DNA of 63,937 nt, filler included, from Octopus bimaculoides (GCF_001194135.2; 5 parts of 5 records of this genome joined end to end with filler, not necessarily neighbours in it), one strand, 5' to 3'. Counted from the whole stretch's first letter, positions 1 to 17,643 are shown. The notes: generated from the sequence alone by a model not told the origin. A program made the numbers and translations.

Positions 1-180
1 CAAAGGAGCCTGGACTATAGACAAAATAAAATCTAACCCCAGAGCCTTCTACAAGTTTGCCAAAGAAAAAGCTTCGGTGCACTCCTCAAAAAAGATGCCC
101 CACTCACAGGAAACCCAATGGGGATAAGTGAAATACTAAATAAGCAATTCAAAAGTATTTTCACTCAACCCTTAGGACAC
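1..180 (+). mobile_element. CR1/L2-like LINE ORF2 fragment
   Basis: Translates with frameshifts to KIKSNPRAFYKFAKEK...ISEILNKQFKSIFT, resembling the NPK.F..Y...ILN..F.SVFT linker between endonuclease and RT. Confidence 0.6.
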
Positions 181-265
181 TTGCAAGTCAGCAATCCAGC
201 TGATTTTTTATTCTGCTGCAGATATAAAAACAGAGGCAGTGATGATTGATTGCATTAATATAAAG

Positions 266-1665
266 CATGGGCCACCAAATTACGGCCCGCGACGTGACAC
301 ATTCTACCAGTATCCCAAGTTTGAAAGTGTTTCGTTAAGAAAACAAGTGTTGCCCGTCAAACCAAAAAGATCCGCATGGGAATATTCTTCAGTATTCATA
401 GGTGGTACCAAAAACACTACATAAAACATTAATGAAAAATGTTGCCCGTTAAACCAAAAAGATCCCATGCTTTTATACTGCTTCTTGCACTTCTTAGATT
501 ACGCATGTTGTATGTATACTGTGTCAGTCACTTCACGCACTACGTATTTCACGCGCCATAATAATTACAACAGTATATCACGTGTGCCTTGAGCTAGTCA
601 GTTATTAGTGATTACAATTAAAATGCGAATATCTGACGCCGAGGCCTGTAAGACTGCTCTTGTTTTTTCTCCAACTATCGTTATGGTTACTAAGAAGAGA
701 AAGGTTAACGGTGAATGTCGTATTTTCAATAAAGAATGGGGAGAAAAGTACTTGGATCTATTTTAAAACGGGGGCCACATTTTTCATTAATGTTTTACGT
801 AGTGTTTTTGGTACGGAAAGACTTTCAAACTTCGTATACTTATCTATTTTGTGTTATAGAACAGAAAAATATTTTTGTATTCGAATTTATTTCATGTAAA
901 AAATTGTCTTATTTCGATAATTTCAACCAATCACTGACAAGTATTCAGTTGTTTATATNNNNNNNNNNNNCGTTTTATTTGCTTTTTTCATTTTCTTTTT
1001 TTTTTCTTCGTTTTATTTGCTGTTTTCTTTTTAAATTTGCCGTTTTACCCTAACCCTAACCCTATCACCGATAGAATTGTTTCAGAATCGTTTGTTTATG
1101 TAGTCGGCACTTAATGTATATCGGCTGAATGGACGTCAGTGATTGGTTGAAATTACAGAAATACGACAACTTTAACATGGAATAACTTAGGGATTTCTTT
1201 TTTTTTTTAAGAAGACTAAGAGAAAAAGATGTTTTATATGACACATTCTACCAGTGTTCCAAGTTTCAAAGTGTTTCGTTAATGAAAAATGTGGCCCCCG
1301 TTTTAAAAACGATCCAAGTAGTTCTTTGGTGGGGAAAAAATTACCAGAAAGCTAGTTGCCTGATATGTAACGAAAGTATTATTGTTATGAAAGAGTACAA
1401 TATTCGTTGTCACTACAAAGTAAAACATCTCTCAACACATTTTAAATATTTTTGAAAATTACGGTCCGAGAAATTTGAATCTATGAAACGTAGTTTGGAA
1501 TCTGAAAAGGATTTCTTTATGAAAAAGTTCGTTGAAAATGAATCTATCACTCATGTAAGTAGCAAAATAGTGAATAAGTTAGTTGGCTGAGCGATGAAAA
1601 CCAGTTACTGACAGAAAGTTTATAAAAAGACTGCGTGATGGAAGCAGCATATGTCCTCTCAACGA
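266..1665 (+). mobile_element. Decayed hAT transposon (SPIN/Charlie-type), interrupted by a MITE
   Basis: ATG 683 gives MVTKKRKVNGECRIFNKEWGEK. After the MITE it continues FF...KASCLICNESIIVMKEYNIRCHYKVKH...KPVTDRKFIKDCVMEAA, typical of this transposase N-terminus. A left-end-like sequence, catgggccaccaaattacggcccgcg, lies at ~266. Confidence 0.75.
751..1318. mobile_element. MITE with ~40-bp TIRs, TA target-site duplication and a (CCCTAA)n core
   Basis: TIR cttggatctattttaaaacggggccacatttttcattaa pairs with ttaatgaaaaatgtggcccccgttttaaaaacgatccaag. TA at 749-750 and 1319-1320. Inner inverted repeat tttcaaccaatcactgac / gtcagtgattggttgaaa. Confidence 0.85.
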
Positions 1666-2169
1666 TTAGCCAGGGATGATTTTTAAAATGAGAATACCTG
1701 AAATAAACTTGACTGCACTCACAAACGAGAATACTAAAAATGAACCTGACCACTCTCAAAAATTAAGTAAAAAAAAAAAAAAACAGTCATGGACTGTGAA
1801 GGTGGCTGTAGAAAATTTAGTAACAGTAATAAATAATTTGTCCTTACCTAATACAAGCCAAAGTTAACAAATTCACCATTCAAAATAATTACAGGCTAAA
1901 GGGAGATAACTGAGAAAGACTTGAAAATTAACATATGATCGTAATAGTTCATGTAAGGTAAAGTAAATATAAAAAATAATCCAGAATCCTTGTCTGATAC
2001 TGGATCAATCCCAAAATCTAATCAGTTTGTGCCAGTCATGAGGCCAAACATCCCTGAAAGTTTCATACAAATCCATCCAGCGGTTCTTGAGATATCTTGT
2101 CCACGGACAAACAAGCTTGTCTGAAAAAAATACCTCCACCTTCGCTAAGGCGGAGGTAAAATAATGATA

Positions 2170-2510
2170 ATCCTTTCTACAATAAGCACAAGACCTGGCA
2201 TTTGTGGGGAGGGGACTTGTTGAGTACATTGACCCCAGTGTTTAACTGGTACTTAATTTATTGACCTCGAGTAATAATAATAATAATAATAATAACTCTT
2301 TCTACTAAAGGCACAAGACCTGAAATTTTGGGGGAGGGGACTAGTTGATTACATTGACCCCAGTGTTTCACTGGTTCCTAATTTTTTGACTCCGAAAGGA
2401 TGAAAGGCAAAGTTGACCTCAGTGGAATCTGAACTCAGACCGTGAAGATGGACAAAATGTCATAAAGCATTTTGCCCAGCATGCTAACAATTCTGTCAGC
2501 TTGTTGCCTT
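2170..2510 (-). mobile_element. SINE family B (one partial + one near-full copy)
   Basis: Matches other copies carrying gtcgactttgcctttcatcctttcggggtcgataaaataagtaccag (Nin/Deu-like domain as I recall it). Confidence 0.75.
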
Positions 2511-3672: not shown

Positions 3673-4074
3673 AAGATAATCAAACCAAATTTTCATCATT
3701 TTGAACCACTTACTCAATGAGTATTGCTGCCAAATTTGGTGAAAATCAGTTCAGCCATTTTCCAGTAATTTTTCAAACACACAGACAATCAAAGGTGAGT
3801 GATTACAATGCTCTGCCATTGCTTATTCACGCAGTGTAATAATGTTAATAATAATAATAATATTTGAAGGAGGAAGATGAATAGAAAACAGAATAGAGGC
3901 AAAACGGGATGTTATAAACATGGAGTTGTTAATTAAAAAATATGAAAATGATGATGATGAGTATGTTATGCAGAAATATTTATATGTGTGTATGGAGAGG
4001 TGCATTCATGCAGAAATACTCTGCAGTGTTCATATCCAAATGAATAATCTCCCTTTTATATCAACGATGTCTAT

Positions 4075-4234
4075 CATCATCATCATCATCATCATCATTT
4101 AACGTCCGCTTTCCATGCTAGCATGGGTTGGACGATTTGACTGAGGACTGGTGGAACCTGAAGGCTACACCAGGCTCCGATCTGATTTGGCAGAGTTTCT
4201 ACAGCTGGATGCCCTTCCTAACGCCAACCACTCC
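4075..4234 (-). mobile_element. RTE-type retroposon 3' end with (GAT)n tail
   Basis: Minus strand reads ggttggcgttaggaagggcatccagctgtagaaac...gcggacgttaaat(gat)n, resembling RTE-clade 3' UTRs. Confidence 0.65.
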
Positions 4235-4459
4235 AATTTGATGAGAACAGTTAGATAAGTAGCAGACAAAGTACAAAGAGTTCGATATAATCAACTGAAA
4301 CTCCCCAGAAAAGAGCTTCAACAGAACCACAGACCAATGATTAAAACCGATAACAGAAATGAAGAATTCCAAAGAATCTCTTATTCACAAGATGTTTTAC
4401 GGTCAAAAGAAGCTCTTGAGAAAACAGTTGATCTGCATCTAAGGCACAACACTAACATT

Positions 4460-4842
4460 TTATTGATGATTAGTTTTGTATAAACTGGTGATAGACAAAT
4501 AACTTGTATTGTGGCTGATAAACTTTACCATGTTCATCTTCAAAACAATTGTATCATTTACTTTAAATCGGTATGTAAATGATGATTGCATTATGGCATA
4601 TTCTGGTGTATTTTTTAAGGAATTGAAACTTTTTTTTATACATTTATATTTTGGTCCATTCTTTCTTTGAAACATTAAGGTTACAATTACTGAAGGAGTA
4701 TCTTCTGGAATGTACAATTGCACGGCGCAGCCTATTTGGTAAATCCCATTTTGTGGCACATATATGTAAGTTTCATTAACCAAATGAAAGTTGCCTACAT
4801 CCTGGCTCTCATCTTTGAACCAATGTAAATCAGTTATACCCT
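4460..4842 (-). CDS. TNF-like ligand gene 1, exon 4 (TNF homology domain)
   Basis: Acceptor ttccttctttttcag|. LHW...GNFHLVNETYIYVPQNGIYQIGCAVQL matches the TNF pattern L.W...L.VP..G.Y.IY.QV.F, and the C-terminal SYLSITSL aligns to strand H. Exon sum 222+31+48+383 = 684 nt = 227 aa + stop. Confidence 0.88.
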
Positions 4843-5300
4843 CTGAAAAAGAAGGAATAATAATACAATAAATAATAATAGTGGAAGGATTTCCAGCATT
4901 AATAGATTCAGAAGAAATTGCAAAACCTCTGTGTAGTTCCTGCATGGGGCAAAGCATTGCTGGTATTTATTTCCCCTTAATATTGTAATAGTAAGAATTA
5001 ACACAAATCCATAATGTTGCTATCTAAGCCTTTTGATAGCAACTTGTCAAATACAGCCTCTTGTTCTATTATACAAACATCTTGTTTTATCATTATCTAA
5101 ATTGAAACCTTCTTTCTAAATTTTATGAATTTTCTAAACATTAGCTTAATAATGAACAAAACCTTTTAATAAATTTTTCATTACTTAAAAAATTAATTGA
5201 AAGAAAGTTTATCTCAAAAAAAATATGATAGCAGAAAGGTTAAATGTGTGATGCAAATTATAAGAAATAGTGTGCAATAATTCTGTATAAATTAACTTAC

Positions 5301-5348
5301 CCAACTCAGTGTAACCTTCTGTTTTCAGATAGAAGAAGGCATGGTGAG
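5301..5348 (-). CDS. TNF-like ligand gene 1, exon 3 (48 nt, SHHAFFYLKTEGYTEL; probable beta-strand A)
   Basis: Acceptor cttatctttcag| and donor G|GTAAGT, phase 1 to 1. 45/48 nt identical to the paralog exon at 13588-13635. Confidence 0.85.
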
Positions 5349-5877
5349 CTGAAAGATAAGAAGAGAGAAAGTAGATGGTGAAAAAGATATATTTTAATAC
5401 AGATTCAATATCAAATAGAAGACTATTCAAAGAAAAAGGCACTTCACATTACCATCTAATAAATAACCATACAGCATATTAATTGTTTCACAATCAATAT
5501 TATCAGAATGAAAATGATCTACATGGAGAACAAGTATTAACCATTAATGAAAGGGAGCCAAGTTTATATAAACATCCTTATATTACACTCATCACATAGT
5601 AGTTTCATGAACTTTAACATGGTTAGTTGTACAGTAGTAATGCCTTGCTAGGACTGATTATACAATTCTAGTAAATTACTGTGGCCATTTCTTTCATGTA
5701 TTTAATGATGTGGGTATTTTTATCATTTATTTCTTTAGTATGTCTTATTTTTCAAGTTGCCTGTTTTAAGACTGTAATGTATTGAAGACATGTTTAGTGA
5801 TTTCATTAATGCTACGATATATTACAGTCAGATAATTTTATTGAGACATGGAAGGTGGAACGACGAAAATAACTTAC

Positions 5878-5908
5878 ATTGTTGAGGTGGCTGTTGCTGT
5901 TTTTCCTT
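5878..5908 (-). CDS. TNF-like ligand gene 1, exon 2 (31-nt stalk microexon, KEKQQQPPQQ)
   Basis: Polypyrimidine acceptor ttttctttctattttag| and donor T|GTAAGT, phase 0 to 1. A homologous exon sits at the same position in the paralog. Confidence 0.8.
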
Positions 5909-7024
5909 CTAAAATAGAAAGAAAACAAGGTAAGAAAACCAAAATTAACACAAGATGGTGACTGATGTTTTTATTACTTTCATCATATTATTGTCATATG
6001 TATGTATATATTAACCAGAGTAAGCACATAAATGTGAAACAAAGTGGAAAAAATAGTTCTTGAATACAGGAGGTGGAGTAATATGCTCAATTTTCTTAAT
6101 TAGACATTCCATTTTAATGATCCGATTTAGATAAATTAAATTATACATATATATATATACATACATATACATATATATATATTTATATATATATATNNNN
6201 NNNNNNNNNNNNNNNNNNNNNNNNNNNNNNNNNNNNNNNNNNNNNNNNNNNNNNNNNNNNNNNNNNNNNNNNNNNNNNNNNNNNNNNNNNNNNNNNTAGC
6301 ACATTGAAAGAATCCGAGAGATTCAGAAAAAATATCTGAGATCTAAAGGGATTAAGTTATACTTTTATATATATAAAGTTGACCAGTAAAGTGGACATTT
6401 AATTATGCTAGAAATAGACCATATGTTGTGTCTACTAAGACCTAGTATTTCTCAAAAGAAATTCAGCGAAATATCAAACCGTAAGCGGGCAAGACATTGA
6501 AAATTACATATATAAAATTAGAAAGTTATTCGCGGACAAAGGTTTCGGAGGTTATACATACAAATGAAAAGTCAAACAAAAGAAAGTGACACTCATCGCA
6601 TTAGTTGGAAGGAAAGACAGAGAGAGACAAAGAGATGGACTGACATGAAGATAGACAATAGTATTGAAAAACGTGTGAGGAAAAAAAATGCAATTTGCAG
6701 GTAAAAGAAAATTAATGAATATGGCGAAAACATGGTTTCTTTACTTTTTGTGTCTTATACAAAAAAGGAAAAACATTTTACTGAAGGCAAAAGCGTAACA
6801 AAAAAATATTAAAGAAAAAAAACAGGTTTTAAAAAATTATTTTAGCGGTGGTGCAAGCGAACAATGGTGGTGGGGGGAGCACAGGATGTTTACAAACAAT
6901 AAAATGATTTTCCTTTTTGTGTTTTGAAAGACAATCGTGAATAAGTAAAAATACTCCGACTCATGCGAGAGAGCTAAAATAAATTAAGTCCGCTGAAAAT
7001 AAATAAAATGTATTGAAATCTCAC

Positions 7025-7246
7025 CTGATTTAGATAAATTATTACTACTGTCACTGCAACTATGGCCAAAGCAATAATTCCGTATTTAAAATACGAGTTG
7101 CGATGCTTTTGTGCGATAATTTCAGTGTCGTTCGTATTTTGTGATTGATTTTCTCTTTCATCGTCTGCATTGATATCTTGAAGGGATTCCTCGGAACCAC
7201 TCTCAGAAGACACTAGTTGCTCTGCATCTGTAATATACCTTGTCAT
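7025..7246 (-). CDS. TNF-like ligand gene 1, exon 1 (cytoplasmic tail + type II transmembrane helix)
   Basis: ATG at 7246-7244 gives 74 aa, MTRYITDAEQLVSSESGSEES...QKHRNSYFKYGIIALAIVAVTVVIIYLNQ. A basic cluster precedes an ~18-aa hydrophobic helix. The exon ends at a CAG|GTGAGA phase-0 donor and splices in frame to exon 2. Confidence 0.85.
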
Positions 7247-7574
7247 GTTTGAAAGTTTTCGTGCACAAATATACAAGACGACATCAGCAAAGATCAATTA
7301 ACCCACTTTCTAGTTTTTCCCTGTATTTATTTCAAGGCCGTGTCAACTTCTCCCTCCAAACTCTTACCTTTTCTCTCTTTCTCTTTGTCTTCTTTTTCTC
7401 ACACTGTATAATAACTTCCAAATAACTCACTCCCCCTTCCTCTCTCAACTCTTTTATTTCTTTCTTCCTTACTCTTTCTCCCTCTCGTTCTTTCTTTCTG
7501 TTCCTCTCTATCTCTTCCTCTACTCCGCTTTGCTTTTCAATACCTGTCAGGCCGTCAATTATAATATATATTTC

Positions 7575-8190
7575 GGCACTGTCATGGTATTAGCTGTCAG
7601 AATTGAAAGTAGAAAAATCGGAAGGAACGTTACTGCTGGTTTGAGTTGATTCTTTGGCTACTGACAGCTAATACCATGACTGGCCGGAGCGAGCTATATG
7701 TCTCTCTCTCTCTCTATCTATCTATCTATCACTCGAAAGTTATTGGAACAAATTTGACACCTATATCCATGCGTTTGAAAACACACAGAGTATAAGGGTA
7801 CTACTAAAGCAGAGTGGTCCCGAACGCGCAGTCGCGCGTCCGCGATAGCTAGTCGTGAGTGGTCGATCCTATTATTTTTAAACTTCAAACTTCATTTGTT
7901 TTCTATTTTGATAAATTCTCTCTGTTGAAAATTATATTTTTATATTTTAAATAATTTGCAATTTCAGAAAATATATTTTTATATTAAATTTGCGTTTTCT
8001 AATTTGATAAATTCTACGGACACAAACAGAGGTGAACGAATGATAGATAGATAGAGAGAGAGAGATAGTGAGATAGACAGACAGATAGATAGCTCCGGCT
8101 AGTCAGTAGCCAAAGAATCAACTCAAACTAGCAGTAACGTTCCTTGTCAGTTCTACTTTCAATTCTGACAGATAATACCATGACAGTGCC
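7575..8190. mobile_element. Non-autonomous DNA transposon with ~90-bp TIRs and 8-bp TSD (Merlin- or Mutator-like)
   Basis: Ends GGCACTGTCATGGTATTA ... TAATACCATGACAGTGCC. Identical TATATTTC at 7567-7574 and 8191-8198. Confidence 0.85.
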
Positions 8191-8847
8191 TATATTTCAT
8201 ATGTAGTCTTTGCGGTGTATGCGGGATATTAGAAGTAAGACACCGACCTTCTCTTCGTCGACGCAGACCTCTCCGGTGGTAACGCACCCTTCCACGTGGC
8301 CCGACCCGAACGCTAAAAATAGCAGCTGCTGTTCCTCACCTCGTCGAAGCGCTCACACGTCCAGCGCTCTCGACTACCCCGATCGAAAGGCCCAATCNNN
8401 NNNNNNNNNNNNNNNNNNNNNNNNNNNNNNNNNNNNNNNNNNNNNNNNNNNNNNNNNNNNNNNNNNNNNNNNNNNNNNNNNNNNNNNNNNNNNNNNNNNN
8501 NNNNNNNNNNNNNNNNNNNNNNNNNNNNNNNNNNNNNNNNNNNNNNNNNNNNNNNNNNNNNNNNNNNNNNNNNNNNNNNNNNNNNNNNNNNNNNNNNNNN
8601 NNNNNNNNNNNNNNNNNNNNNNNNNNNNNNNNNNNNNNNNNNNNNNNNNNNNNNNNNNNNNNNNNNNNNNNNNNNNNNNNNNNNNNNNNNNNNNNNNNNN
8701 NNNNNNNNNNNNNNNNNNNNNNNNNNNNNNNNNNNNNNNNNNNNNNNNNNNNNNNNNNNNNNNNNNNNNNNNNNNNNNNNNNNNNNNNNNNNNNNNNNNN
8801 NNNNNNNNNNNNNNNNNNNNNNNNNNNNNNNNNNNNNNNNNNNNNNN

Positions 8848-8884
<37 letters not shown>

Positions 8885-8899
8885 ATGTATATATATATA

Positions 8900-9036
8900 C
8901 GGGGGCTTCTTTCAGTTTCCGTCTACTAAATCCAGTCACAAGGCTTTGGTCGGCCCGAGGCTATAGTAGAAGATTCGCCCAAGGTGCCACGCAGTAGGAT
9001 TGAACCCGGAACCATGTGGTTGGGAAGCAAGCTTCC
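8900..9036 (-). mobile_element. SINE family C (CORE-like ccttgggc(a/g)ag) with TA/CA microsatellite tail
   Basis: Near-identical to copies at 44590-44745 and 40755-40919. Confidence 0.8.
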
Positions 9037-10089
9037 TGAAGGGCCAAGTGGGATAAAATGCTAAAGATAATACTGGGGTAAAAAGAAAAAAAAAACACAG
9101 AGAAATATAGCAACTGTACTTAAAGAAATGATATAAAATATATAAAGATAAGTTCGAAGAGATTTCATTTTTATAAAAATCGTGGGCGGAAAGCGTAGAA
9201 TGTGAAAATAATGGTGGAAGGGAGATAACTCTAAGCATCTTATTAAACCGCTTTTCACACGGAAGTGATCGATAAAATAAAGAACTAGTCAAGTTCAGCG
9301 AATGATTTAATCATCTATAACGAAATCAAAGGACCTGAATCTATAAGTTTTAATAAAGTATTGAGATCGATCACATCTATATGCACGCACGTTGTTCATG
9401 TTATCTTTAGCTGGAATTATGCATGGGCTGACGATGCCAGACACAAAAATAAGGAGAGAGAAGAATAGGGACAGTAGTGGGTATTGAGGAACTAGAGGAC
9501 CTCTGGGGTTCGAAAAGCTGATTTTGGGTAATTGGGTATCAACATTGTAAACAACATGTTCTAGCGGTGTCTTGGGATCTTTTCCCTTGAATAAAATTAG
9601 TGCCGTTGTTTGTCAACAACAACTATCGGCGGTAGTTATTTATGACATCGTTCGTGCGTCTGTACTGGTTTTAGCTTTAGGGTTAGGGTTTGGGTTTTAG
9701 AGTTAGGGTTAGGGTTACGATTTGGCAAAAATACTCATAACCCTAACCCCTTTAAATCAACATCCTCTTTGTATTTTATATCTTACTTGCAGTCACCCAG
9801 CCTTTGCCCTGGGCTGTACTGTACTCACATGCATCTCTTGTAATGCCCAGGAGTCAAATTGTGGCTAAAAGTTGCTAGTTGCCACTCTTCCTGAGAAAAA
9901 GGTCTAAATTCTAACCAATTTGTCGTTGTTCTGATGTTTCCGGTTCTCTGGAGCAAGCATTTCAGGCTGTGTTACTTTGAAGTTGTTCTGTTAACACCTG
10001 TTCTCTTAAGCAGGATTTTCTATCAGCTTGAGGCTCCAACCTCCCTTGTTTCTGTTCTGGTATCTTATGTTTCCTCAAGCAGGTAACAA

Positions 10090-10660
10090 AGGCTCTCTGT
10101 TGATAACAAAGGGCCGCTCCCTCAGAGTGAAAGGCAGACTGTATGATGCCTGTGTGCAAACAGCTATGCTACACAGTAGTTAAACATGCCTATACTTGAA
10201 AGAAATGAAGCTAGTATACTTCACTCGATGTGCAATATCAGTGTGCATGTACGACAGAGTATAAGTGTCTTGAAAGAAAAGCTGGACATAAGAGGCGTCA
10301 AATGTGGCATACAAGAGAGATGACTGTGCTGGTATGGGAATATAATGCATATGGCCGAGGGCAGCTGTGTAAAAATGTGCTGAACTCTAACTGTGGAAGA
10401 GATAGATCTAGGAAGACATGAGACAAGATGGTGAAGCATGGTCTTTGAACATTGGGCCTCACGGTGACAATGACAAGTGACCAAGACCTTTGGTGAGATG
10501 TTGTGCTTGAAAAGACCTGTCAAGCCAAATGAAATTATAGTCGTGGCCAATGCCAGTGATGCAGAGACTGCAACAGATACACCCGGACAAGTTTCAAATA
10601 AGTGGATTATACGTGGGCTACGACACCCTGCCAAGTGTAGTAACGGTAGAGGAGCTGTGG
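10090..10660 (+). mobile_element. RTE-clade LINE 3' fragment (decayed ORF end + 3' UTR)
   Basis: LLITKGRSLRVKGRLYDACVQTAMLH...ERNEASILHSMCNISVHVRQSISVLKEKLDIRGVKCGIQER*LCWYG, with in-frame stops. Confidence 0.85.
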
Positions 10661-11558
10661 CCACTTACAATTGCTAAAGAAAAAACATGATTATTAACTG
10701 TATGAGAGAACTGTTAAATGAAACTGCGAGTTTTGGGGGACTCGTAAGCCATTTCATCACCTCATTGTAAGTAATTCATTTCATTCATCATTCGTTCTTT
10801 GTACCCCACATGCTGTATTGTTTTGTCTGTCCTTGTAGTGTCCCTCCTCTGTGTAGTGGCCGCATGTGCCAAATAAAGAAATCAGTCTGAAATTGGTTTC
10901 TGACTCGCATGTATGAACAGCGGGGTTTTAACTGCTACCAACTCAGCTGAGACATGCAACAACCCAGAACAGCAGTTTTCACTGCTGTCAACCAAGCTGA
11001 ACCAATACTGTGATTTTTCATCACGCAAAAATGCTTTCTCCGCATATAACTCATAGCTAGTTATGCACATTTGTAATGTAGGGATATGTTTCGATGTCAG
11101 CTCAACACAGTATCATTTATGCTAAATAAATGAATTTATACTCACTACGACAGGATACATATCCACTACAGCGATATCAGAATGGAACTTTCTACAATGA
11201 TTCATCTGCATTAACATCTGTAAGTCCCACTAACTCACACACTGTTTGTTGTTTTACTCTTCTTCTACCAGCATATGTGATGAGACAGAAGGGTGTCCAT
11301 AAATAATCTTTACAACACTACCAAACTTCAAATTGGAATGGTAATTTATTCCCCACCCACCAACCTGTTTTCAGGAAAAAAAAGTGTATAGCGAGCATGA
11401 CAGAGGTCAGATTAGTTTAAAACATACAAAAAAAACCCAACTTATTACCAAATTTATTTAATGAAAAGAGTGGTTAACATACAAACCAACTTTGCTTTTT
11501 GAAGTATTAAGATGAGAAGGACTAAATAAGTACCAAACAAAGTACAAACAGGTTGATA

Positions 11559-11786
11559 TTGGGTTGTCCGGAAAGTTTATGCCGATTTGTAGTAGCTTAC
11601 CTTTCGACTTATTTGCCATGAAACCACCTCAGTTCTGGGAAGAGGTTATTTTCAAGTTAAAGGAAAGATGGAGACGCATTGTGCAACAAAATGGTTCATA
11701 TTTGGTTGATTAAAAATGTAATGGCAAGTATTTATTGACCTTTTTCTTTCCTTTAAGAATCGGCATGAACTTTCCAGACAACCCAA
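11559..11786 (+). mobile_element. Internally deleted mariner element (MITE)
   Basis: TIR ttgggttgtccggaaagtttatgccgatt / aatcggcatgaactttccagacaacccaa with TA TSDs. The interior encodes the transposase C-terminus FAMKPPQFWEEVIFKLKERWRRIVQQNGSYLVD*. Confidence 0.92.
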
Positions 11787-11893
11787 TATAATTAAATGAA
11801 ACAAAAGAATCTCTTATTCATAAGATGTTTTATGGTGAAAAAGAACTTTTAAAGAAAACAGTTGACCTATGCCTAAATCACAACACAACCACT

Positions 11894-12282
11894 TTATTGA
11901 TGAAGATTTTCGTGTAAGCTGGTAATAGACAAATAGCTTGAGGGTTTATTGGGACTGATGTATTTTGCCATGTTCATCTTCAAAAAGATTGTATCATTAG
12001 TTTTCAATCGGTATGTAAATCCCGATTGTATTACAACATGTTCTGGTAAATCTTCTAAGGAGTTAGAACTTTCTTTCATATATTCATATTTTGTTCCATT
12101 CTTTTTCTGAAACATCAAGGTTACAACCATCGAAGAAGTATCTTTTGGAATATACAATTGCACTGCACAGTTTATTTCATAAATCCCATCTTGTGGAATA
12201 TATATGTAAGTGTCGTCAACCAGCTGAATGTTGCCTACATTCTGCTGCCTACTTTTCTCCCAGTGCAAATTAGTTACTCTCT
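11894..12282 (-). CDS. TNF-like ligand gene 2, exon 4 (TNF homology domain)
   Basis: Intact frame, 81/129 aa identical to gene 1 exon 4 by hand alignment. One in-frame 6-nt indel, same acceptor, same stop context. Confidence 0.85.
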
Positions 12283-12325
12283 CTGAAAAAGAAATAATAA
12301 TAATAATAATAACAATAATAATAAT

Positions 12326-12592
12326 GGGTGTTTTGCTCAACATCCTTAAACAAACCTTATTCAGGGACCTTTTGAGCGGGATGGGCTACTCAACCTGAAA
12401 AAAATTCTAACTGGGCCCCACCTGCGAGGTCATGCGCTGTTTATCTTGATATGAGATCACCATGTCGCGCACATATGGTTGTGATGCATGTGCCAGGTGA
12501 ACCCTTATCAGATGGGTAGTCATGATGGGTATATTAGGCTTTGTATATTTTACCCCAGTGTCACTTTGATGGCATGCACTGCTCTCTCACTC
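12326..12592 (+). mobile_element. ~260-bp retroposon-like element embedded in (AAT)n, within gene 2 intron 3
   Basis: Reverse-complement copy at 46816-47068. Both copies are flanked by AAT repeats on both sides. Absent from the gene 1 intron. Confidence 0.8.
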
Positions 12593-12647
<55 letters not shown>

Positions 12648-13587
12648 TGCACATTGCTATTTCTCAATTATACATCAACCAATATAATATTTGTGTTTAT
12701 ACAATTCACACACGAACATGTAGTAGCCTCCACACATACACAAGATAAACAAGCATTGAGCACACAGTATTTAAATGCCTCTAACAAAAGCTGCAACAAG
12801 TTTCTTTTATTTCTTTTTAAACAATGGAAAGGGACATCTGTGCTCATTTGATAAAGCTTTCAAGAAATATTGGTGAATTTCATTCTGTAAACCTTGGGCA
12901 AGCACAATACAAAAAAAAAGCCCCATTACACGACTGGAGGCAGTGTTCTGTCAAAAAGTTCACACTAAACAGAAGGACCCGTCCCTTAATGTCACTTCCG
13001 ATACCCAACTGAAGGACACAACTTATAATGCACAAGCAATCCACAATACAAACACTAGGAGAGCAAAAGACTCAAGCACAAACTCCATAATAAAACATAC
13101 TGATGCAGTGCAATACAGAAAGGGTTTGTACTTCCTAAGCAATAAATAAAAAGGAACACATGATGCGTAACCCTCTGTTGCAGGGTTGTGAATACTGTGT
13201 TGATGACAAGCATGCACAGCCCCTCCAAATGCGGGTAGACAAACCCCTTCCAAGCTTGAAGCAAATCTGTTTAGGTTAGTGATGAAAATCACTCCTTGCC
13301 AGTAAGGTTAAAATGAATTCTTCATGTAAAATGCAGACTAAAAACGGATTATACCACATTGTCTGTTACATGGGTCACCAAGGGACATCCCCAGGGAGGA
13401 CTCAACTTCAGTTTAAAAAGTTGAAAATTGGAACAAACTCCTCTGAAAATGATCTTGAGGGAAATCAATCTTGACACCTTTCATTACTAACCCGGCTGAA
13501 ACCGGCTCAGGCTCTCTAGTACAAATGTCTAGCTTTCATTAGCAAATTATGAGAAAGTGTGCAATAAATTGGTTAAAATTAACTTAC

Positions 13588-13635
13588 CCAACTCAGTGTA
13601 ACCCTCTGTTTTCAGTTGGAAGAAGGCATGGTGAG
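13588..13635 (-). CDS. TNF-like ligand gene 2, exon 3 (SHHAFFQLKTEGYTEL)
   Basis: Same 48-nt length, splice sites and phase as gene 1 exon 3. Confidence 0.85.
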
Positions 13636-14266
13636 CTGAAAGATAAGAGAGAAAGTAGATGGGGAAAAAGAGATATATTTTAATACAGATTCAATATCAA
13701 CAGAAGACTATTCAAAGAAAAGGGCACTTCCTGATCTATTTCATAAATTTAATATTTCTGATTATTATCTAATAAATAATTATACAGTATATTAACTGTT
13801 TCACAATCATCATTATCATATAAAAATGATCTACATAGCAAACAATTATTAATCATTAAAGAAAGGGAGCTAAGACAATATAAACATCCTTATATTACAC
13901 CCATCACATAGTAGTTTCATGAGCTTTAACATGTTCAGTTGTACAGTAGCAATGCCTTGCTGGGAACAATAGTACAATTCTAGTAAACACGTACAGGAGG
14001 CTTCATCCTATCAAAGTGTCATCTGAAATCATGGTCCAGTTAATTATTGTAGACATTTCATTCACATATTTAATGATGTGGGTATTTTTGCTATTTATTT
14101 CTTTAGTATGTCTGATACTTTTCAAGTTGAAAGTATTGTTGCCTATTTTAAGACTGTAATATATTGAGGACATGTTTAGTGATTTCATTAACATTACTAT
14201 GTGTTACGGTGTCAGAGAATTTTATAGACATATGGAAGGTGAAATGAAAACAATATATGCACTTAC

Positions 14267-14309
14267 ATTGTGGACGCGGTGATGGCTCAGGCTGTTGCAA
14301 AATGTTCAC
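14267..14309 (-). CDS. TNF-like ligand gene 2, exon 2 (43-nt stalk microexon, VNILQQPEPSPRPQ)
   Basis: Acceptor ttttctttctttccactttag| and donor T|GTAAGT, phase 0 to 1 as in gene 1. Flanking introns are homologous to gene 1. Confidence 0.78.
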
Positions 14310-14566
14310 CTAAAGTGGAAAGAAAGAAAAGAAGATGAGAAAAGAAAAAGTAAAGATAAGATGGTAACTGATGCTGTTCATATTACCATCCTCTTTTTAT
14401 ATATACACATATGTTGTATGTATTGTTGGTTGTGGCTGGTCAGAAAGTTAACATTGGTTTCACACCTGTTATTGCACTTAACGATAGAGACACTTTCTAG
14501 ACTTGTTGGCCAGAGGCTCACAATCTCTCTTCTAATGGACACAAAAATAGAGTCTTAGTCAGTTTG

Positions 14567-14790
14567 GTAATAATCCTTTCTACTAAAGGCACAAGGCTTG
14601 AAACTTACAGGGAGGGGCTAGTGGATAGTCGTTTACATCAATCCGAGTGTCTCACTGATATTTAATTTATTGACTCCAAAAGGATGGAAGTCAAAGTCAA
14701 CCTTGGCAGAATTTGAACTGAGAATGTAAGGATGAGCGAAATACCGCTAGGTACTTTGCCTGGCGTGCTAATGATTGTCAGCTCGCCAGT
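14567..14790 (-). mobile_element. SINE family B
   Basis: Similar to other B copies (aaggatggaagtcaaagtcaacc...gaatttgaactgagaatgtaa). Confidence 0.75.
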
Positions 14791-14845
14791 TTGATAATAA
14801 TAAAGACCCTTCTAGGAGAGATGAAATTATCTCCCATTGAATATA

Positions 14846-16077: not shown

Positions 16078-16188
16078 TATGGCTGTGTGGTCGAGAAGCT
16101 TGCTTTCCAACCATGTCACTTTTGGTTCAGTCCCACTGTGCAGCACATTAGGCAATTCTCTTTCCTAGCAGCTGACCAAAGCCTTGTG
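16078..16188 (+). mobile_element. SINE family C, partial
   Basis: ggctgtgtggtcgagaagcttgctttccaaccatg...ggttcagtcccactgtgcagcac...gaccaaagccttgtg. Confidence 0.65.
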
Positions 16189-17643
16189 TATTATATAATT
16201 GACATTACTGTATTGATATATAAAATAACACATACAACTCACTTATTGTCATATAATAAACAGAGGTTCGTGTATGAAATTGATCTTTTTTCTACTTCAA
16301 TTATTACATGTTTTTTTCTTATAAAATACACACATACAGAAGGAGTAAATCTCTATATATGATAACACTTTGAATGTGGCTCCCGAGAAAGAGTAACAGT
16401 AATTACCCGATCAACGTGGCACCAGTGAGTTTAAGAACTCAACCAGGTACTATATTCTTCTAAGAAAAGCTATTTGTATTTTTGTTTGTTGTAATGCTTA
16501 AGTTCAATAAATCATGGTGCGTTTTAAATTTTCCCCCAAAATTTATTCACTTATCTCCCTTAGACCCGTCGTGTTTTTTGATAGGGTGGGGGCTGCACTA
16601 AATGCAACATTTTGGAAAAGGGCCCGTAGCTCCCTTGAATGGGGGAAGGCACATAAAGACTTGGGAATACTTCCATAGTCTTACCCGGAAAATTTTACAC
16701 AAGAATTAACTTTTAGTTTTTATGTAGATAAAATTTCACCCCACCCCCATTGATCTTTTCACCCGCACGATTTTTACGAAGGAAAAAAAAAAAATCGGAT
16801 CCCACCCCCTTTTTTTCCGAACGAAAATAAAGGATTTGCAGCATATTAGGAGATCAGAGTACTTGATTCCACGCAAAAAAATCCGATTTTTTTTTCCTTA
16901 GTGAAAATCATGCGGGTAAAAAGATCAATGGGGGTGAAATTTCCGAGGCTTCCACCTCACCCCGCCCTGATTTTGGAACCCAAAAAGGGTTTTGTAGTAT
17001 ATNNNNNNNNNNNNNNNNNNNNNNNNNNNNNNNNNNNNNNNNNNNNNNNNNNNNNNNNNNNNNNNNNNNNNNNNNNNNNNNNNNNNNNNNNNNNNNNNNN
17101 NNNNNNNNNNNNNNNNNNNNNNNNNNNNNNNNNNNNNNNNNNNNNNNNNNNNNNNNNNNNNNNNNNNNNNNNNNNNNNNNNNNNNNNNNNNNNNNNNNNN
17201 NNNNNNNNNNNNNNNNNNNNNNNNNNNNNNNNNNNNNNNNNNNNNNNNNNNNNNNNNNNNNNNNNNNNNNNNNNNNNNNNNNNNNNCGTATTAATTCCAA
17301 TATCTGTGTGCGCGCACACACTAACATAAATACATACATAAACGAAGGGGCATAACTACAGATTTCGGTTAATGTTGACATTATTACCCGGAAATGAAAT
17401 CGAAAAAAAAAAAAATACTTGAAAACAACAACAATTTATTCATTTGGACACCAACTAAAAATTACAAAATGAATATTGTTTACCCTAAGGTTCTTCAAGA
17501 GTGACAAATTTTCAGTTCTAAATTCTATTATCATCACAATTTAGATATTTTTTTTTATAGAATATAGAGATTTTGAAATAACTATGCGAAAAAAAAATAT
17601 ATCTTCACATTTATACTTTACTAATCTGAACAAGAACAGCAGT

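What the first reader, a model, noticed from the sequence alone, without database searches (positions are those of the whole stretch)
4460..14309. Tandem pair of spliced, divergent TNF-superfamily-like ligands hidden from the ORF track
Seen: four canonical GT-AG exons join into a 227-aa type II membrane protein (acidic tail, basic cluster, TM helix, ~13-aa stalk, TNF-like domain). A paralog with the same exon phases (0/1/1) lies 7.4 kb upstream on the same strand. Established: TNFSF ligands are type II proteins with most of the domain in the last exon, and molluscs carry lineage-specific TNF expansions. Inference: this is a cephalopod-specific cytokine duplication. I cannot assign it to a named vertebrate ligand or to Eiger.
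Basis: partly seen in the sequence, partly recalled or inferred. Interest (0 to 1): 0.8.

Follow-up and report, generated by a model that had tools for sequence, protein, structure and literature searches.

The report
Octopus tandem TNF-like ligand genes
Two neighbouring, intron-split Octopus bimaculoides genes encode membrane-anchored TNF-family signalling proteins; this is an ordinary lineage-specific family expansion, with one copy already annotated and the other intact but mis-joined to its neighbour in the public annotation.

Summary
On the minus strand, four GT-AG exons (7246-7025, 5908-5878, 5348-5301, 4842-4460) join into a 227-aa type II membrane protein, gene A. A paralog, gene B, has exons 2-4 at 14309-14267, 13635-13588 and 12282-11894, with the same intron phases. 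The window is Octopus bimaculoides chromosome CM046624.1.

- **Gene B** is RefSeq LOC106873363, which UniProt calls a 'THD domain-containing protein'. Its exon 1 lies just beyond the piece's edge.
- **TNF membership:** B passes Pfam TNF (27.8 bits, cut-off 23). A does not pass on its own. AlphaFold models of both match only TNF-superfamily ligands in the top 50 PDB hits. No C1q signal appeared.
- **Transcript support:** an RNA contig from a related octopus confirms the B-type junctions.
- **Cluster size:** the pair belongs to a cluster of at least four genes (B, A, C, D). The family was detected only in cephalopods.
- **Prior report:** a preprint already describes an Octopus-specific TNFSF expansion.
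- **What is new:** A's complete protein is absent from public collections. RefSeq instead fuses parts of A's exon 4 to gene C through cryptic donors.
- **Gaps:** neither gap interrupts an exon, but A's exon 1 sits on a 2.1-kb contig bounded by both gaps.

This is a new member of a known kind, of low to moderate interest.

The parts
7025..7246 (-). Gene A exon 1 (ATG at 7246). It encodes the acidic cytoplasmic tail, the basic cluster and the TM signal-anchor (aa 1-74), and ends ...YLNQ|GTGAGA in phase 0.
   Evidence: Identical to residues 1-74 of RefSeq XP_052832125.1. Lies on the contig 6297-8397 bounded by both gaps.
5909..7024 (-). Gene A intron 1, containing the assembly gap 6197-6296 (100 N). 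A TA/TATG microsatellite lies at 6142-6196.
5878..5908 (-). Gene A exon 2 (31 nt; stalk KEKQQQPPQQ; ends in phase 1).
5301..5348 (-). Gene A exon 3 (48 nt; SHHAFFYLKTEGYTELE, the first strand of the TNF homology domain; phase 1).
4460..4842 (-). Gene A exon 4 (383 nt including the TAA stop at 4460-4462). It encodes most of the TNF homology domain, aa 102-227.
   Evidence: AlphaFold pLDDT 85.3 and pTM 0.75; top 50 PDB matches all TNFSF ligands.
4689..4690 (-). Cryptic GT donor inside A's exon 4 (after Ser151). RefSeq XP_052832125.1 uses it to join A to exon 2 of the next gene, C.
4527..4528 (-). Second cryptic GT donor inside A's exon 4 (after Met204). The older RefSeq isoform XP_014774971.1 uses it, also joining to gene C exon 2.
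14267..14309 (-). Gene B (LOC106873363) exon 2 (43 nt; stalk VNILQQPEPSPRPQ).
   Evidence: The mRNA contig L004 breaks exactly at 14267/13635.
13588..13635 (-). Gene B exon 3 (48 nt).
11894..12282 (-). Gene B exon 4 coding part (stop at 11894-11896).
   Evidence: (Pfam TNF 27.8 bits).
11469..11893 (-). Gene B 3' UTR, at least this far, by alignment of the related-species mRNA contig. It contains a 234-bp MITE (11556-11789).
8398..8847 (.). Assembly gap (450 N) in the A-B intergenic region. (TA)n lies on its right flank.

Best explanation
The region holds two adjacent members of a cephalopod-restricted branch of the TNF ligand superfamily. They lie inside a cluster of at least four genes (B > A > C > < D) on O. 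bimaculoides chromosome CM046624.1.

Gene structure (shown). Each gene has four coding exons. Exon 1 encodes a cytoplasmic tail and a signal-anchor helix. Exon 2 encodes a short Pro/Gln-rich stalk. Exons 3 and 4 encode a TNF homology domain.

Mechanism (inferred from the family, not tested). The protein inserts as a type II membrane protein and displays a trimeric jelly-roll domain outside the cell. It engages TNFR-type cysteine-rich receptors to drive TRAF/JNK/NF-kB or death signalling. No furin site is present, so it probably acts membrane-bound or after metalloprotease shedding. A's acidic, serine-rich tail (SSESGSEES) could support reverse signalling.

Status of each copy. Gene B is a bona fide, already annotated, expressed gene type. 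Gene A is an intact copy that split from the B lineage slightly before the O. bimaculoides / O. vulgaris divergence. It has evolved about six times faster at non-synonymous sites. It most likely still encodes the stand-alone 227-aa ligand. The RefSeq A-C fusion models are most likely read-through by-products or modelling artefacts.
For: Gene models. Splice sites, phases and ORFs are as described. Exon structure is conserved in B, C and D, including a Gln at the end of exon 1.

TNF domain.
- B scores 27.8 bits on Pfam TNF, against a cut-off of 23.
- 10 of 21 relatives hit TNF and none hit C1q.
- The family profile has one significant PDB sequence hit, the zebrafish TNF-family ligand 7dov_A, E 5e-4.
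- The AlphaFold model of B's domain (pLDDT 72, pTM 0.70) and of A's exon 4 (pLDDT 85, pTM 0.75) match only TNFSF ligands in the top 50. These include TL1A, TNF, APRIL, TRAIL, RANKL, CD40L, FasL and LT, at TM 0.65-0.8.

Topology. There is a single hydrophobic segment with basic residues on its N-terminal side, sequons in the ectodomain and no furin motif.

Transcript evidence. An uninterrupted 225-aa B-type ORF sits on a 1,277-nt RNA contig. Its alignment blocks end at the predicted junctions.

Cluster and annotation..

Selection.
- In the domain, dN/dS is 0.38-0.48 for A against B and 0.18 for B against its O. vulgaris ortholog.
- dS between A and B is 0.41, against 0.35 between the orthologs.
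- The last 75 codons of A have dN/dS 0.38-0.47, and the only indel there is in frame.

Phylogeny. The B clade excludes A with 99% bootstrap support.

Distribution. The family is restricted to cephalopods.
Against: - A alone gives no Pfam TNF hit, even at E<=10.
- A's exact protein is in no public collection, and no transcript-derived protein carries its C-terminal half.
- Both RefSeq releases model A's exon 4 as spliced from internal donors into gene C.
- Apart from an AATAAA overlapping the stop codon, no poly(A) signal lies within 700 nt downstream of A.
- dN/dS is about 1.1-1.4 in A's N-terminal region.
- No A ortholog was found among annotated O. vulgaris or O. sinensis proteins, or within 14 kb downstream of the O. 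vulgaris B ortholog.
- The link between A's exon 1 and the rest of the gene crosses an unclosed gap.
- Trimerisation, receptor binding and cytokine activity are untested.
Confidence: 0.7

Rival explanations
1. Gene A is a decaying or non-functional duplicate. Its ORF is still open, but it is no longer used as a stand-alone ligand gene. Transcription through it only feeds aberrant or alternative 5' exons of gene C.
For: - No database protein or transcript carries A's full domain.
- Two RefSeq models splice out of exon 4 at cryptic donors.
- dN/dS is raised: 0.4-0.5 in the domain and at least 1 in the tail.
- A fails Pfam.
- No ortholog was seen in O. vulgaris or O. sinensis.
- No downstream poly(A) signal was found.
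Against: - All 227 codons are intact and all six splice signals are canonical.
- The only indels relative to B in the domain are in frame.
- Synonymous changes are in excess in the part downstream of the cryptic donor, p 0.01-0.05.
- Residues invariant across the family are retained.
- The fold prediction is confident.
Confidence: 0.22
2. The RefSeq fusion is the real product: a single protein with A's N-terminus and half-domain followed by C's complete TNF homology domain. This would be a tandem-domain ligand of the kind described as 'in-frame paralogs'.
For: - XP_052832125.1 and XP_014774971.1 exist as models.
- A preprint reports multi-THD invertebrate gene models.
Against: - The fusion cuts A's jelly roll in mid-sandwich, after residue 151 or residue 204.
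- It skips C's own exon 1, which has an ATG, a TM helix and a GT donor and is used by isoforms X1 and X2.
- The two models use different donors, as expected of noisy read-through.
- The part of A that the fusion discards still shows coding constraint.
Confidence: 0.1
3. The domain is a C1q-like or other jelly-roll domain rather than a TNF ligand.
For: TNF and C1q share a fold. Two relatives give weak hits to BclA_C, a C1q/TNF-like domain.
Against: - There is no PF00386 hit in any of the 21 members.
- All top 50 structural matches for both models are TNFSF ligands.
- The topology is type II, with no signal peptide and no collagen-like Gly-X-Y region.
Confidence: 0.03
4. Assembly artefact. The 2.1-kb contig carrying A's exon 1 (6297-8397) is misplaced between two TA-microsatellite-flanked gaps, so the 227-aa model joins pieces of different loci.
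For: - The contig is bounded by both gaps.
- The outer flanks of both gaps are similar TA repeats.
- The same gaps persist in the chromosome-level assembly.
Against: - Orientation, phase 0 and the terminal Gln match the family's exon 1.
- Its coding sequence aligns to B's exon 1, with 131 of 226 columns identical, best in the TM region.
- Every other known paralog has its own distinct exon 1.
- RefSeq joins it to exon 2.
Confidence: 0.06

Closest known systems
Octopus bimaculoides LOC106873363 (XP_014776179.1; UniProt A0A0L8H1L3, 'THD domain-containing protein')
   Same: It is gene B itself. Identity is 100% over exons 2-4 in the window.
   Different: Its exon 1 lies outside the piece. Gene A is 55% identical to it overall and 63-67% in the domain.
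O. bimaculoides LOC106872472 (XP_052832125.1, 315 aa; older isoforms XP_014774969-71) and LOC106872473
   Same: XP_052832125.1 contains A's residues 1-151 with the same e1/e2/e3/e4 junctions. C and D are the next paralogs in the cluster.
   Different: The RefSeq models leave A's exon 4 at internal GT donors and continue in gene C. The stand-alone 227-aa protein is not in any collection searched.
Vertebrate TNFSF ligands (TL1A/TNFSF15, TNF-alpha, TRAIL, RANKL, CD40L, APRIL, FasL, lymphotoxins)
   Same: They share the jelly-roll TNF homology domain (TM 0.65-0.8) and type II topology. Most of the domain lies in the last exon. The gene-structure comparison is from general knowledge of TNF genes.
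   Different: Sequence identity is only 9-21%. No single best vertebrate counterpart emerges. B has one Cys in the domain and A has two, so there is no conserved disulfide. The stalk is very short and has no furin site.
Invertebrate TNFs (Drosophila Eiger; abalone and bivalve TNFs; the six Octopus vulgaris TNFSF paralogs in preprint 10.1101/2024.07.27.603686)
   Same: They belong to the same superfamily. The preprint reports that the Octopus paralogs form a 100%-supported monophyletic, lineage-specific clade. This matches the restricted distribution found here.
   Different: A profile of this family retrieved no non-cephalopod protein at E<=1e-3. Orthology to Eiger was not tested.
C1q-domain proteins
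   Same: They share the same superfold.
   Different: There is no Pfam C1q hit, no signal peptide and no collagen-like region. The structural matches favour TNFSF.

Membership tests
TNF ligand superfamily (TNFSF; Pfam PF00229) | Sequence match to the TNF homology domain profile above the curated cut-off: gene B | tested here: met
   27.8 bits against a cut-off of 23, E 2.7e-6, covering profile positions 1-124 of 127. The full-length P0003 scores 26.7 bits.
TNF ligand superfamily (TNFSF; Pfam PF00229) | Sequence match to the TNF homology domain profile above the curated cut-off: gene A | tested here: not met
   No PF00229 hit at E<=10. Homology is carried by 63-67% identity to B and by 10 of 21 relatives hitting PF00229.
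TNF ligand superfamily (TNFSF; Pfam PF00229) | Ten-strand jelly-roll fold closest to solved TNFSF ligands | tested here: met
   B domain: pLDDT 72 and pTM 0.70, Foldseek E about 5e-9. A exon 4: pLDDT 85 and pTM 0.75, E about 1e-6. The top 50 matches are all TNFSF ligands in both searches.
TNF ligand superfamily (TNFSF; Pfam PF00229) | Type II membrane topology: N-terminal cytoplasmic tail, one signal-anchor helix, C-terminal extracellular domain | tested here: met
   There is a single hydrophobic 19-mer (A 55-73, B 47-65) with basic residues on its N-terminal side. Sequons lie in the C-terminal domain. This is a hydropathy prediction only.
TNF ligand superfamily (TNFSF; Pfam PF00229) | Assembly into non-covalent trimers | not testable with these tools
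   No multimer prediction or experiment was available.
TNF ligand superfamily (TNFSF; Pfam PF00229) | Binding to a TNFR-type cysteine-rich-domain receptor and downstream signalling | not testable with these tools
   No receptor lies in the window and no binding assay was possible.
C1q family (Pfam PF00386) | gC1q profile match, usually with a signal peptide and a collagen-like Gly-X-Y stalk | tested here: not met
   There is no PF00386 hit in A, B or the 21 relatives. The sequence shows no Gly-X-Y repeats and an internal signal anchor instead of a signal peptide.
Named orthogroup (Eiger/EDA, TNF-alpha, TRAIL and so on) | Phylogenetic or best-reciprocal assignment to one named ligand | tested here: inconclusive
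   Structural hits are spread evenly over many TNFSF members at 9-21% identity. The only significant sequence hit in the PDB is a fish TNF-family ligand, at E 5e-4. No joint phylogeny with Eiger was built.

The most novel reading that the evidence does not exclude
Gene A is a young paralog retained in the O. bimaculoides lineage and undergoing neofunctionalisation. On this reading the cytoplasmic tail is diversifying and the receptor-binding surface is altered. Alternatively, or in addition, regulated A-to-C read-through splicing produces tandem-domain ligands. That would make this cluster a live example of how multi-THD 'single-chain' TNF ligands arise.
Probability: 0.1. Interest if true: 0.45.

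Novelty: new member of a known kind. Interest (0 to 1): 0.25.

Why it matters
The practical value is modest.
- It corrects a gene model. A complete 227-aa TNF-like ligand is missing from public protein sets because RefSeq fuses it to its neighbour.
- It shows that the 'pair' is part of a tandem cluster of at least four genes in a cephalopod-restricted TNFSF branch.
- It gives a concrete warning: multi-THD 'in-frame paralog' models in invertebrate proteomes can be read-through fusions of tandem genes.

For cephalopod immunology it adds one more candidate cytokine to test. It opens no new kind of biology.

Tried and rejected
- **B's exon 1 in the piece.** I searched by tblastn, blastn and a hydrophobicity scan and found nothing. 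It lies off the edge.
- **Single-sequence searches.** Pfam on A gave no TNF hit. phmmer of B against PDB sequences was not significant, E 0.88. The family profile improved this to 5e-4.
- I used B's domain and A's exon-4 translation instead. A's first strand, encoded by exon 3, was therefore not in its model.
- **Gap closure.** The fetched chromosome loci are the same assembly with identical gaps.
- **Synteny in O. vulgaris.**
  - The B ortholog was found, with a 22-kb intron 1.
  - No A-like exons lie within 14 kb downstream of it.
  - C-like tandem copies lie 45-75 kb away on the opposite strand.
  - A 23.5-kb stretch between the two loci was not sampled, so absence of an A ortholog is not shown.
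- **A's position in the family tree.** It is unresolved: 35% bootstrap with the LOC106878338 clade.
- **RNA scans.** Rfam and tRNA scans of the piece found nothing.
- **Literature.** Searches for the LOC identifiers found nothing.
- **Repeat artefacts.** Inverted-repeat 'hits' joining the two gaps come from N runs and TA microsatellites.


Full report
**Source and gaps**

The piece is Octopus bimaculoides chromosome CM046624.1 (GCA_001194135.2), about 9.92-9.94 Mb, in reverse orientation. Megablast of the window against two loci fetched from that assembly gives 100% identity, with N runs in the same places. Continuity across the gaps therefore cannot be tested with the data at hand.

What can be said is the following.
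- Gap 6197-6296 lies inside intron 1 of gene A.
- Gap 8398-8847 lies between the two genes.
- No exon or reading frame crosses either gap.

Two claims do depend on the gaps. The first is the link between A's exon 1 and exons 2-4. Exon 1 sits on a 2.1-kb contig, 6297-8397, bounded by both gaps, and the outer flanks of both gaps are TA microsatellites. The second is the quoted 7.4-kb spacing, which includes 550 estimated N.

**The observation**

On the minus strand, exons 7025-7246, 5878-5908, 5301-5348 and 4460-4842 join into 684 nt, giving 227 codons plus TAA. The donors are GTGAGA, GTAAGT and GTAAGT. The acceptors are pyrimidine-rich TTTTAG, TTTCAG and TTTCAG. The intron phases are 0/1/1.

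The protein has these parts:
- a 54-aa acidic tail with 12 D/E against 5 K/R;
- KHRNSYFK next to the single hydrophobic segment, residues 55-73;
- a stalk of about 12 aa;
- a C-terminal domain with three N-glycosylation sequons.

The paralog's exons 2-4 are 14267-14309, 13588-13635 and 11894-12282, with identical phases. The two copies are 73-82% identical at the DNA level, from about 100 bp upstream of exon 2, through both introns, to about 220 bp past the stop.

The paralog's exon 1 is not in the piece. A mechanical ORF list does show the last exons and A's exon 1 as ORFs. 'Hidden' therefore applies to the joined proteins, not to every part.

**What the genes are**

The paralog, gene B, is RefSeq LOC106873363 (XP_014776179.1, 225 aa). 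UniProt calls it a THD domain-containing protein. Its exon 1 (MTRPANEEE...GLIQ) lies at L001 10001-10198, just past a 1,093-N gap beyond the piece's edge.

A 1,277-nt RNA-derived contig (Logan, SRR16213285) from a related octopus carries an uninterrupted 225-aa B-type ORF. It aligns to the locus in four blocks, and the exon 2/3 boundary falls exactly at 14267|13635. The B-type junctions are thus confirmed in mRNA, though in another species.

Gene A's residues 1-151, with the same three junctions, form the start of RefSeq XP_052832125.1 (LOC106872472, 315 aa). That model leaves A's exon 4 at an internal GT (4690-4689) and continues in the next gene. An older isoform, XP_014774971.1, starts inside A's exon 4. 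It leaves at another internal GT (4528-4527) and joins the same downstream exon. The exact 227-aa protein is absent from a collection of 15 billion sequences.

**The cluster**

tblastn on the flanking loci shows four family genes.
- **B and A** are as described above.
- **C** lies downstream of A. It has its own exon 1 with an ATG, a TM helix and a GT donor at L002 20098-20307. Its stand-alone proteins of 234 and 235 aa were RefSeq isoforms X2 and X1.
- **D** (LOC106872473) is on the opposite strand.

At least four further members exist in the genome: LOC106876236, LOC106876237 and LOC106880432 on the same chromosome, and LOC106878338 elsewhere.

**TNF or C1q**

- B scores 27.8 bits on Pfam TNF (cut-off 23). 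A gives no hit, even at E<=10.
- Of 21 relatives, 10 hit PF00229 at E<=0.01 and none hits C1q.
- A family profile has one significant hit among PDB sequences, the zebrafish TNF-family ligand 7dov_A, at E 5e-4.
- The AlphaFold model of B's domain (pLDDT 72, pTM 0.70) and of A's exon-4 product (pLDDT 85, pTM 0.75) are beta-sandwiches.
- The top 50 Foldseek matches in the PDB are TNFSF ligands in both searches: TL1A, TNF-alpha, APRIL, TRAIL, RANKL, CD40L, FasL and lymphotoxins, at TM 0.65-0.8 and 9-21% identity.

No single vertebrate ligand stands out.

**Distribution and prior knowledge**

An exhaustive profile search of 1.84 billion representative proteins found only 21 with E<=1e-3. Those with names come from Octopus bimaculoides, O. 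vulgaris, O. sinensis, Argonauta hians and Acanthosepion (Sepia) pharaonis.

A preprint (10.1101/2024.07.27.603686) already reports that six O. vulgaris TNFSF paralogs form a 100%-supported monophyletic clade. It interprets this as lineage-specific expansion. No paper in the library mentions these loci by identifier.

**Evolution of the pair**

| Comparison | dN/dS | dS |
|---|---|---|
| A vs B lineage, domain | 0.38-0.48 | 0.41-0.57 |
| B vs O. vulgaris ortholog, domain | 0.18 | 0.35 |
| A vs B lineage, N-terminal region | about 1.1-1.4 | 0.42-0.52 |

- A three-way split of the pairwise distances puts about 0.17 of dN on A's branch and about 0.03 on B's. This is my arithmetic.
- In a neighbour-joining tree the B orthologs group with 99% support, excluding A. 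A's own position is unresolved.
- A MITE in B's 3' UTR (11556-11789) is transcribed in the related species and absent from the homologous site in A. This fits a duplication that predates the divergence of those B orthologs.
- The 75 codons of A downstream of the first cryptic donor have dN/dS 0.38-0.47, with an excess of synonymous changes (p 0.01-0.05) and only an in-frame indel. This argues that the whole exon has been read as coding sequence.

**Mechanism**

Shown: the gene structure, the predicted topology, the fold and the family membership of B.

Inferred from established knowledge of TNFSF ligands:
- type II insertion;
- trimer formation;
- engagement of TNFR-type receptors and TRAF/JNK/NF-kB or death signalling;
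- possible shedding (no furin motif);
- possible reverse signalling through A's serine- and acid-rich tail.

**Verdict**

The finding is an ordinary member of an expansion already recognised in octopus. The one new element is that gene A's complete ORF is missing from public annotation. RefSeq replaces it with A-C fusion models. These are most likely read-through by-products or modelling artefacts, although they also hint that A's 3' end may be inefficiently terminated. Whether A is still a working stand-alone gene is the open question. I put it at roughly 60-65%.

Noticed in passing
window 4689-4690 and 4527-4528 (minus strand); L002 23030-23060: Two RefSeq releases model chimeric transcripts that leave gene A's last exon at different internal GT donors. 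Both join exon 2 of the next TNF-like gene, C. That acceptor is a NAGNAG (tagAAG|AAA), which explains isoforms that differ by one Lys.
   Followed up: yes
L002 20098-26261 (+) and 32029-32391 (-), outside the window: Two further TNF-like genes lie downstream of A. C (old LOC106872472 isoforms X1 and X2) has its own TM-encoding exon 1. D (LOC106872473) is in opposite orientation. The 'pair' is therefore a cluster of at least four genes.
   Followed up: partly
window 6297-8397: A's exon 1 lies on a 2.1-kb contig bounded by both assembly gaps. The outer flanks of both gaps (6142-6196 and 8848-8899) are TA-type microsatellites, so its placement rests on scaffolding alone.
   Followed up: partly
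window 11556-11789: A 234-bp MITE with 32-nt terminal inverted repeats (94% complementary) lies in B's 3' UTR. Its interior looks like the tail of a mariner transposase. It is present in the related-species mRNA contig, and the homologous site in A (about 4283) is empty.
   Followed up: partly
window 7570-8195: An element of about 630 bp with long inverted arms lies roughly 325 bp upstream of A's start codon. The arm segments are 44-45 nt at 93-98% complementarity, plus adjacent CT/GATA-rich arms.
   Followed up: partly
window 4460 and downstream to about 3760 (minus strand): No AATAAA or ATTAAA lies within 700 nt downstream of A's stop, apart from an AATAAA that overlaps the stop codon. B has several. 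This might favour read-through from A into C.
   Followed up: partly
window 2160-2270, 2285-2520, 14565-14800; also 2600-2830, 4070-4240, 8900-9050, 16080-16190: These are SINE-like interspersed repeats. The first family occurs as two adjacent copies (111 nt at 84% identity) and again in B's intron 1. The others were recognised by eye only. No tRNA or Rfam match was found.
   Followed up: partly
window 9676-9755 and 1049-1072: Short interstitial telomere-like runs (TTAGGG and its complement CCCTAA) lie in the A-B intergenic region and near the 12-N gap.
   Followed up: no
window 1-250, 10090-10560 (+); 620-770, 1320-1560 (+): These look like degenerate transposon coding remnants with in-frame stops. 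Some resemble LINE reverse-transcriptase tails. Others resemble a hAT/zinc-finger-BED-like ORF split by an inserted repeat (direct copies 295-357 and 1239-1301). Judged by eye, not tested.
   Followed up: no
L003 (O. vulgaris OX597837.1 29.79-29.84 Mb) and L005 (29.87-29.91 Mb): In O. vulgaris the B ortholog has a 22-kb intron 1, against about 5 kb here. Two tandem C-like copies lie 45-75 kb away on the opposite strand, one apparently with a disrupted last exon. Copy number and arrangement of the cluster differ between species.
   Followed up: partly
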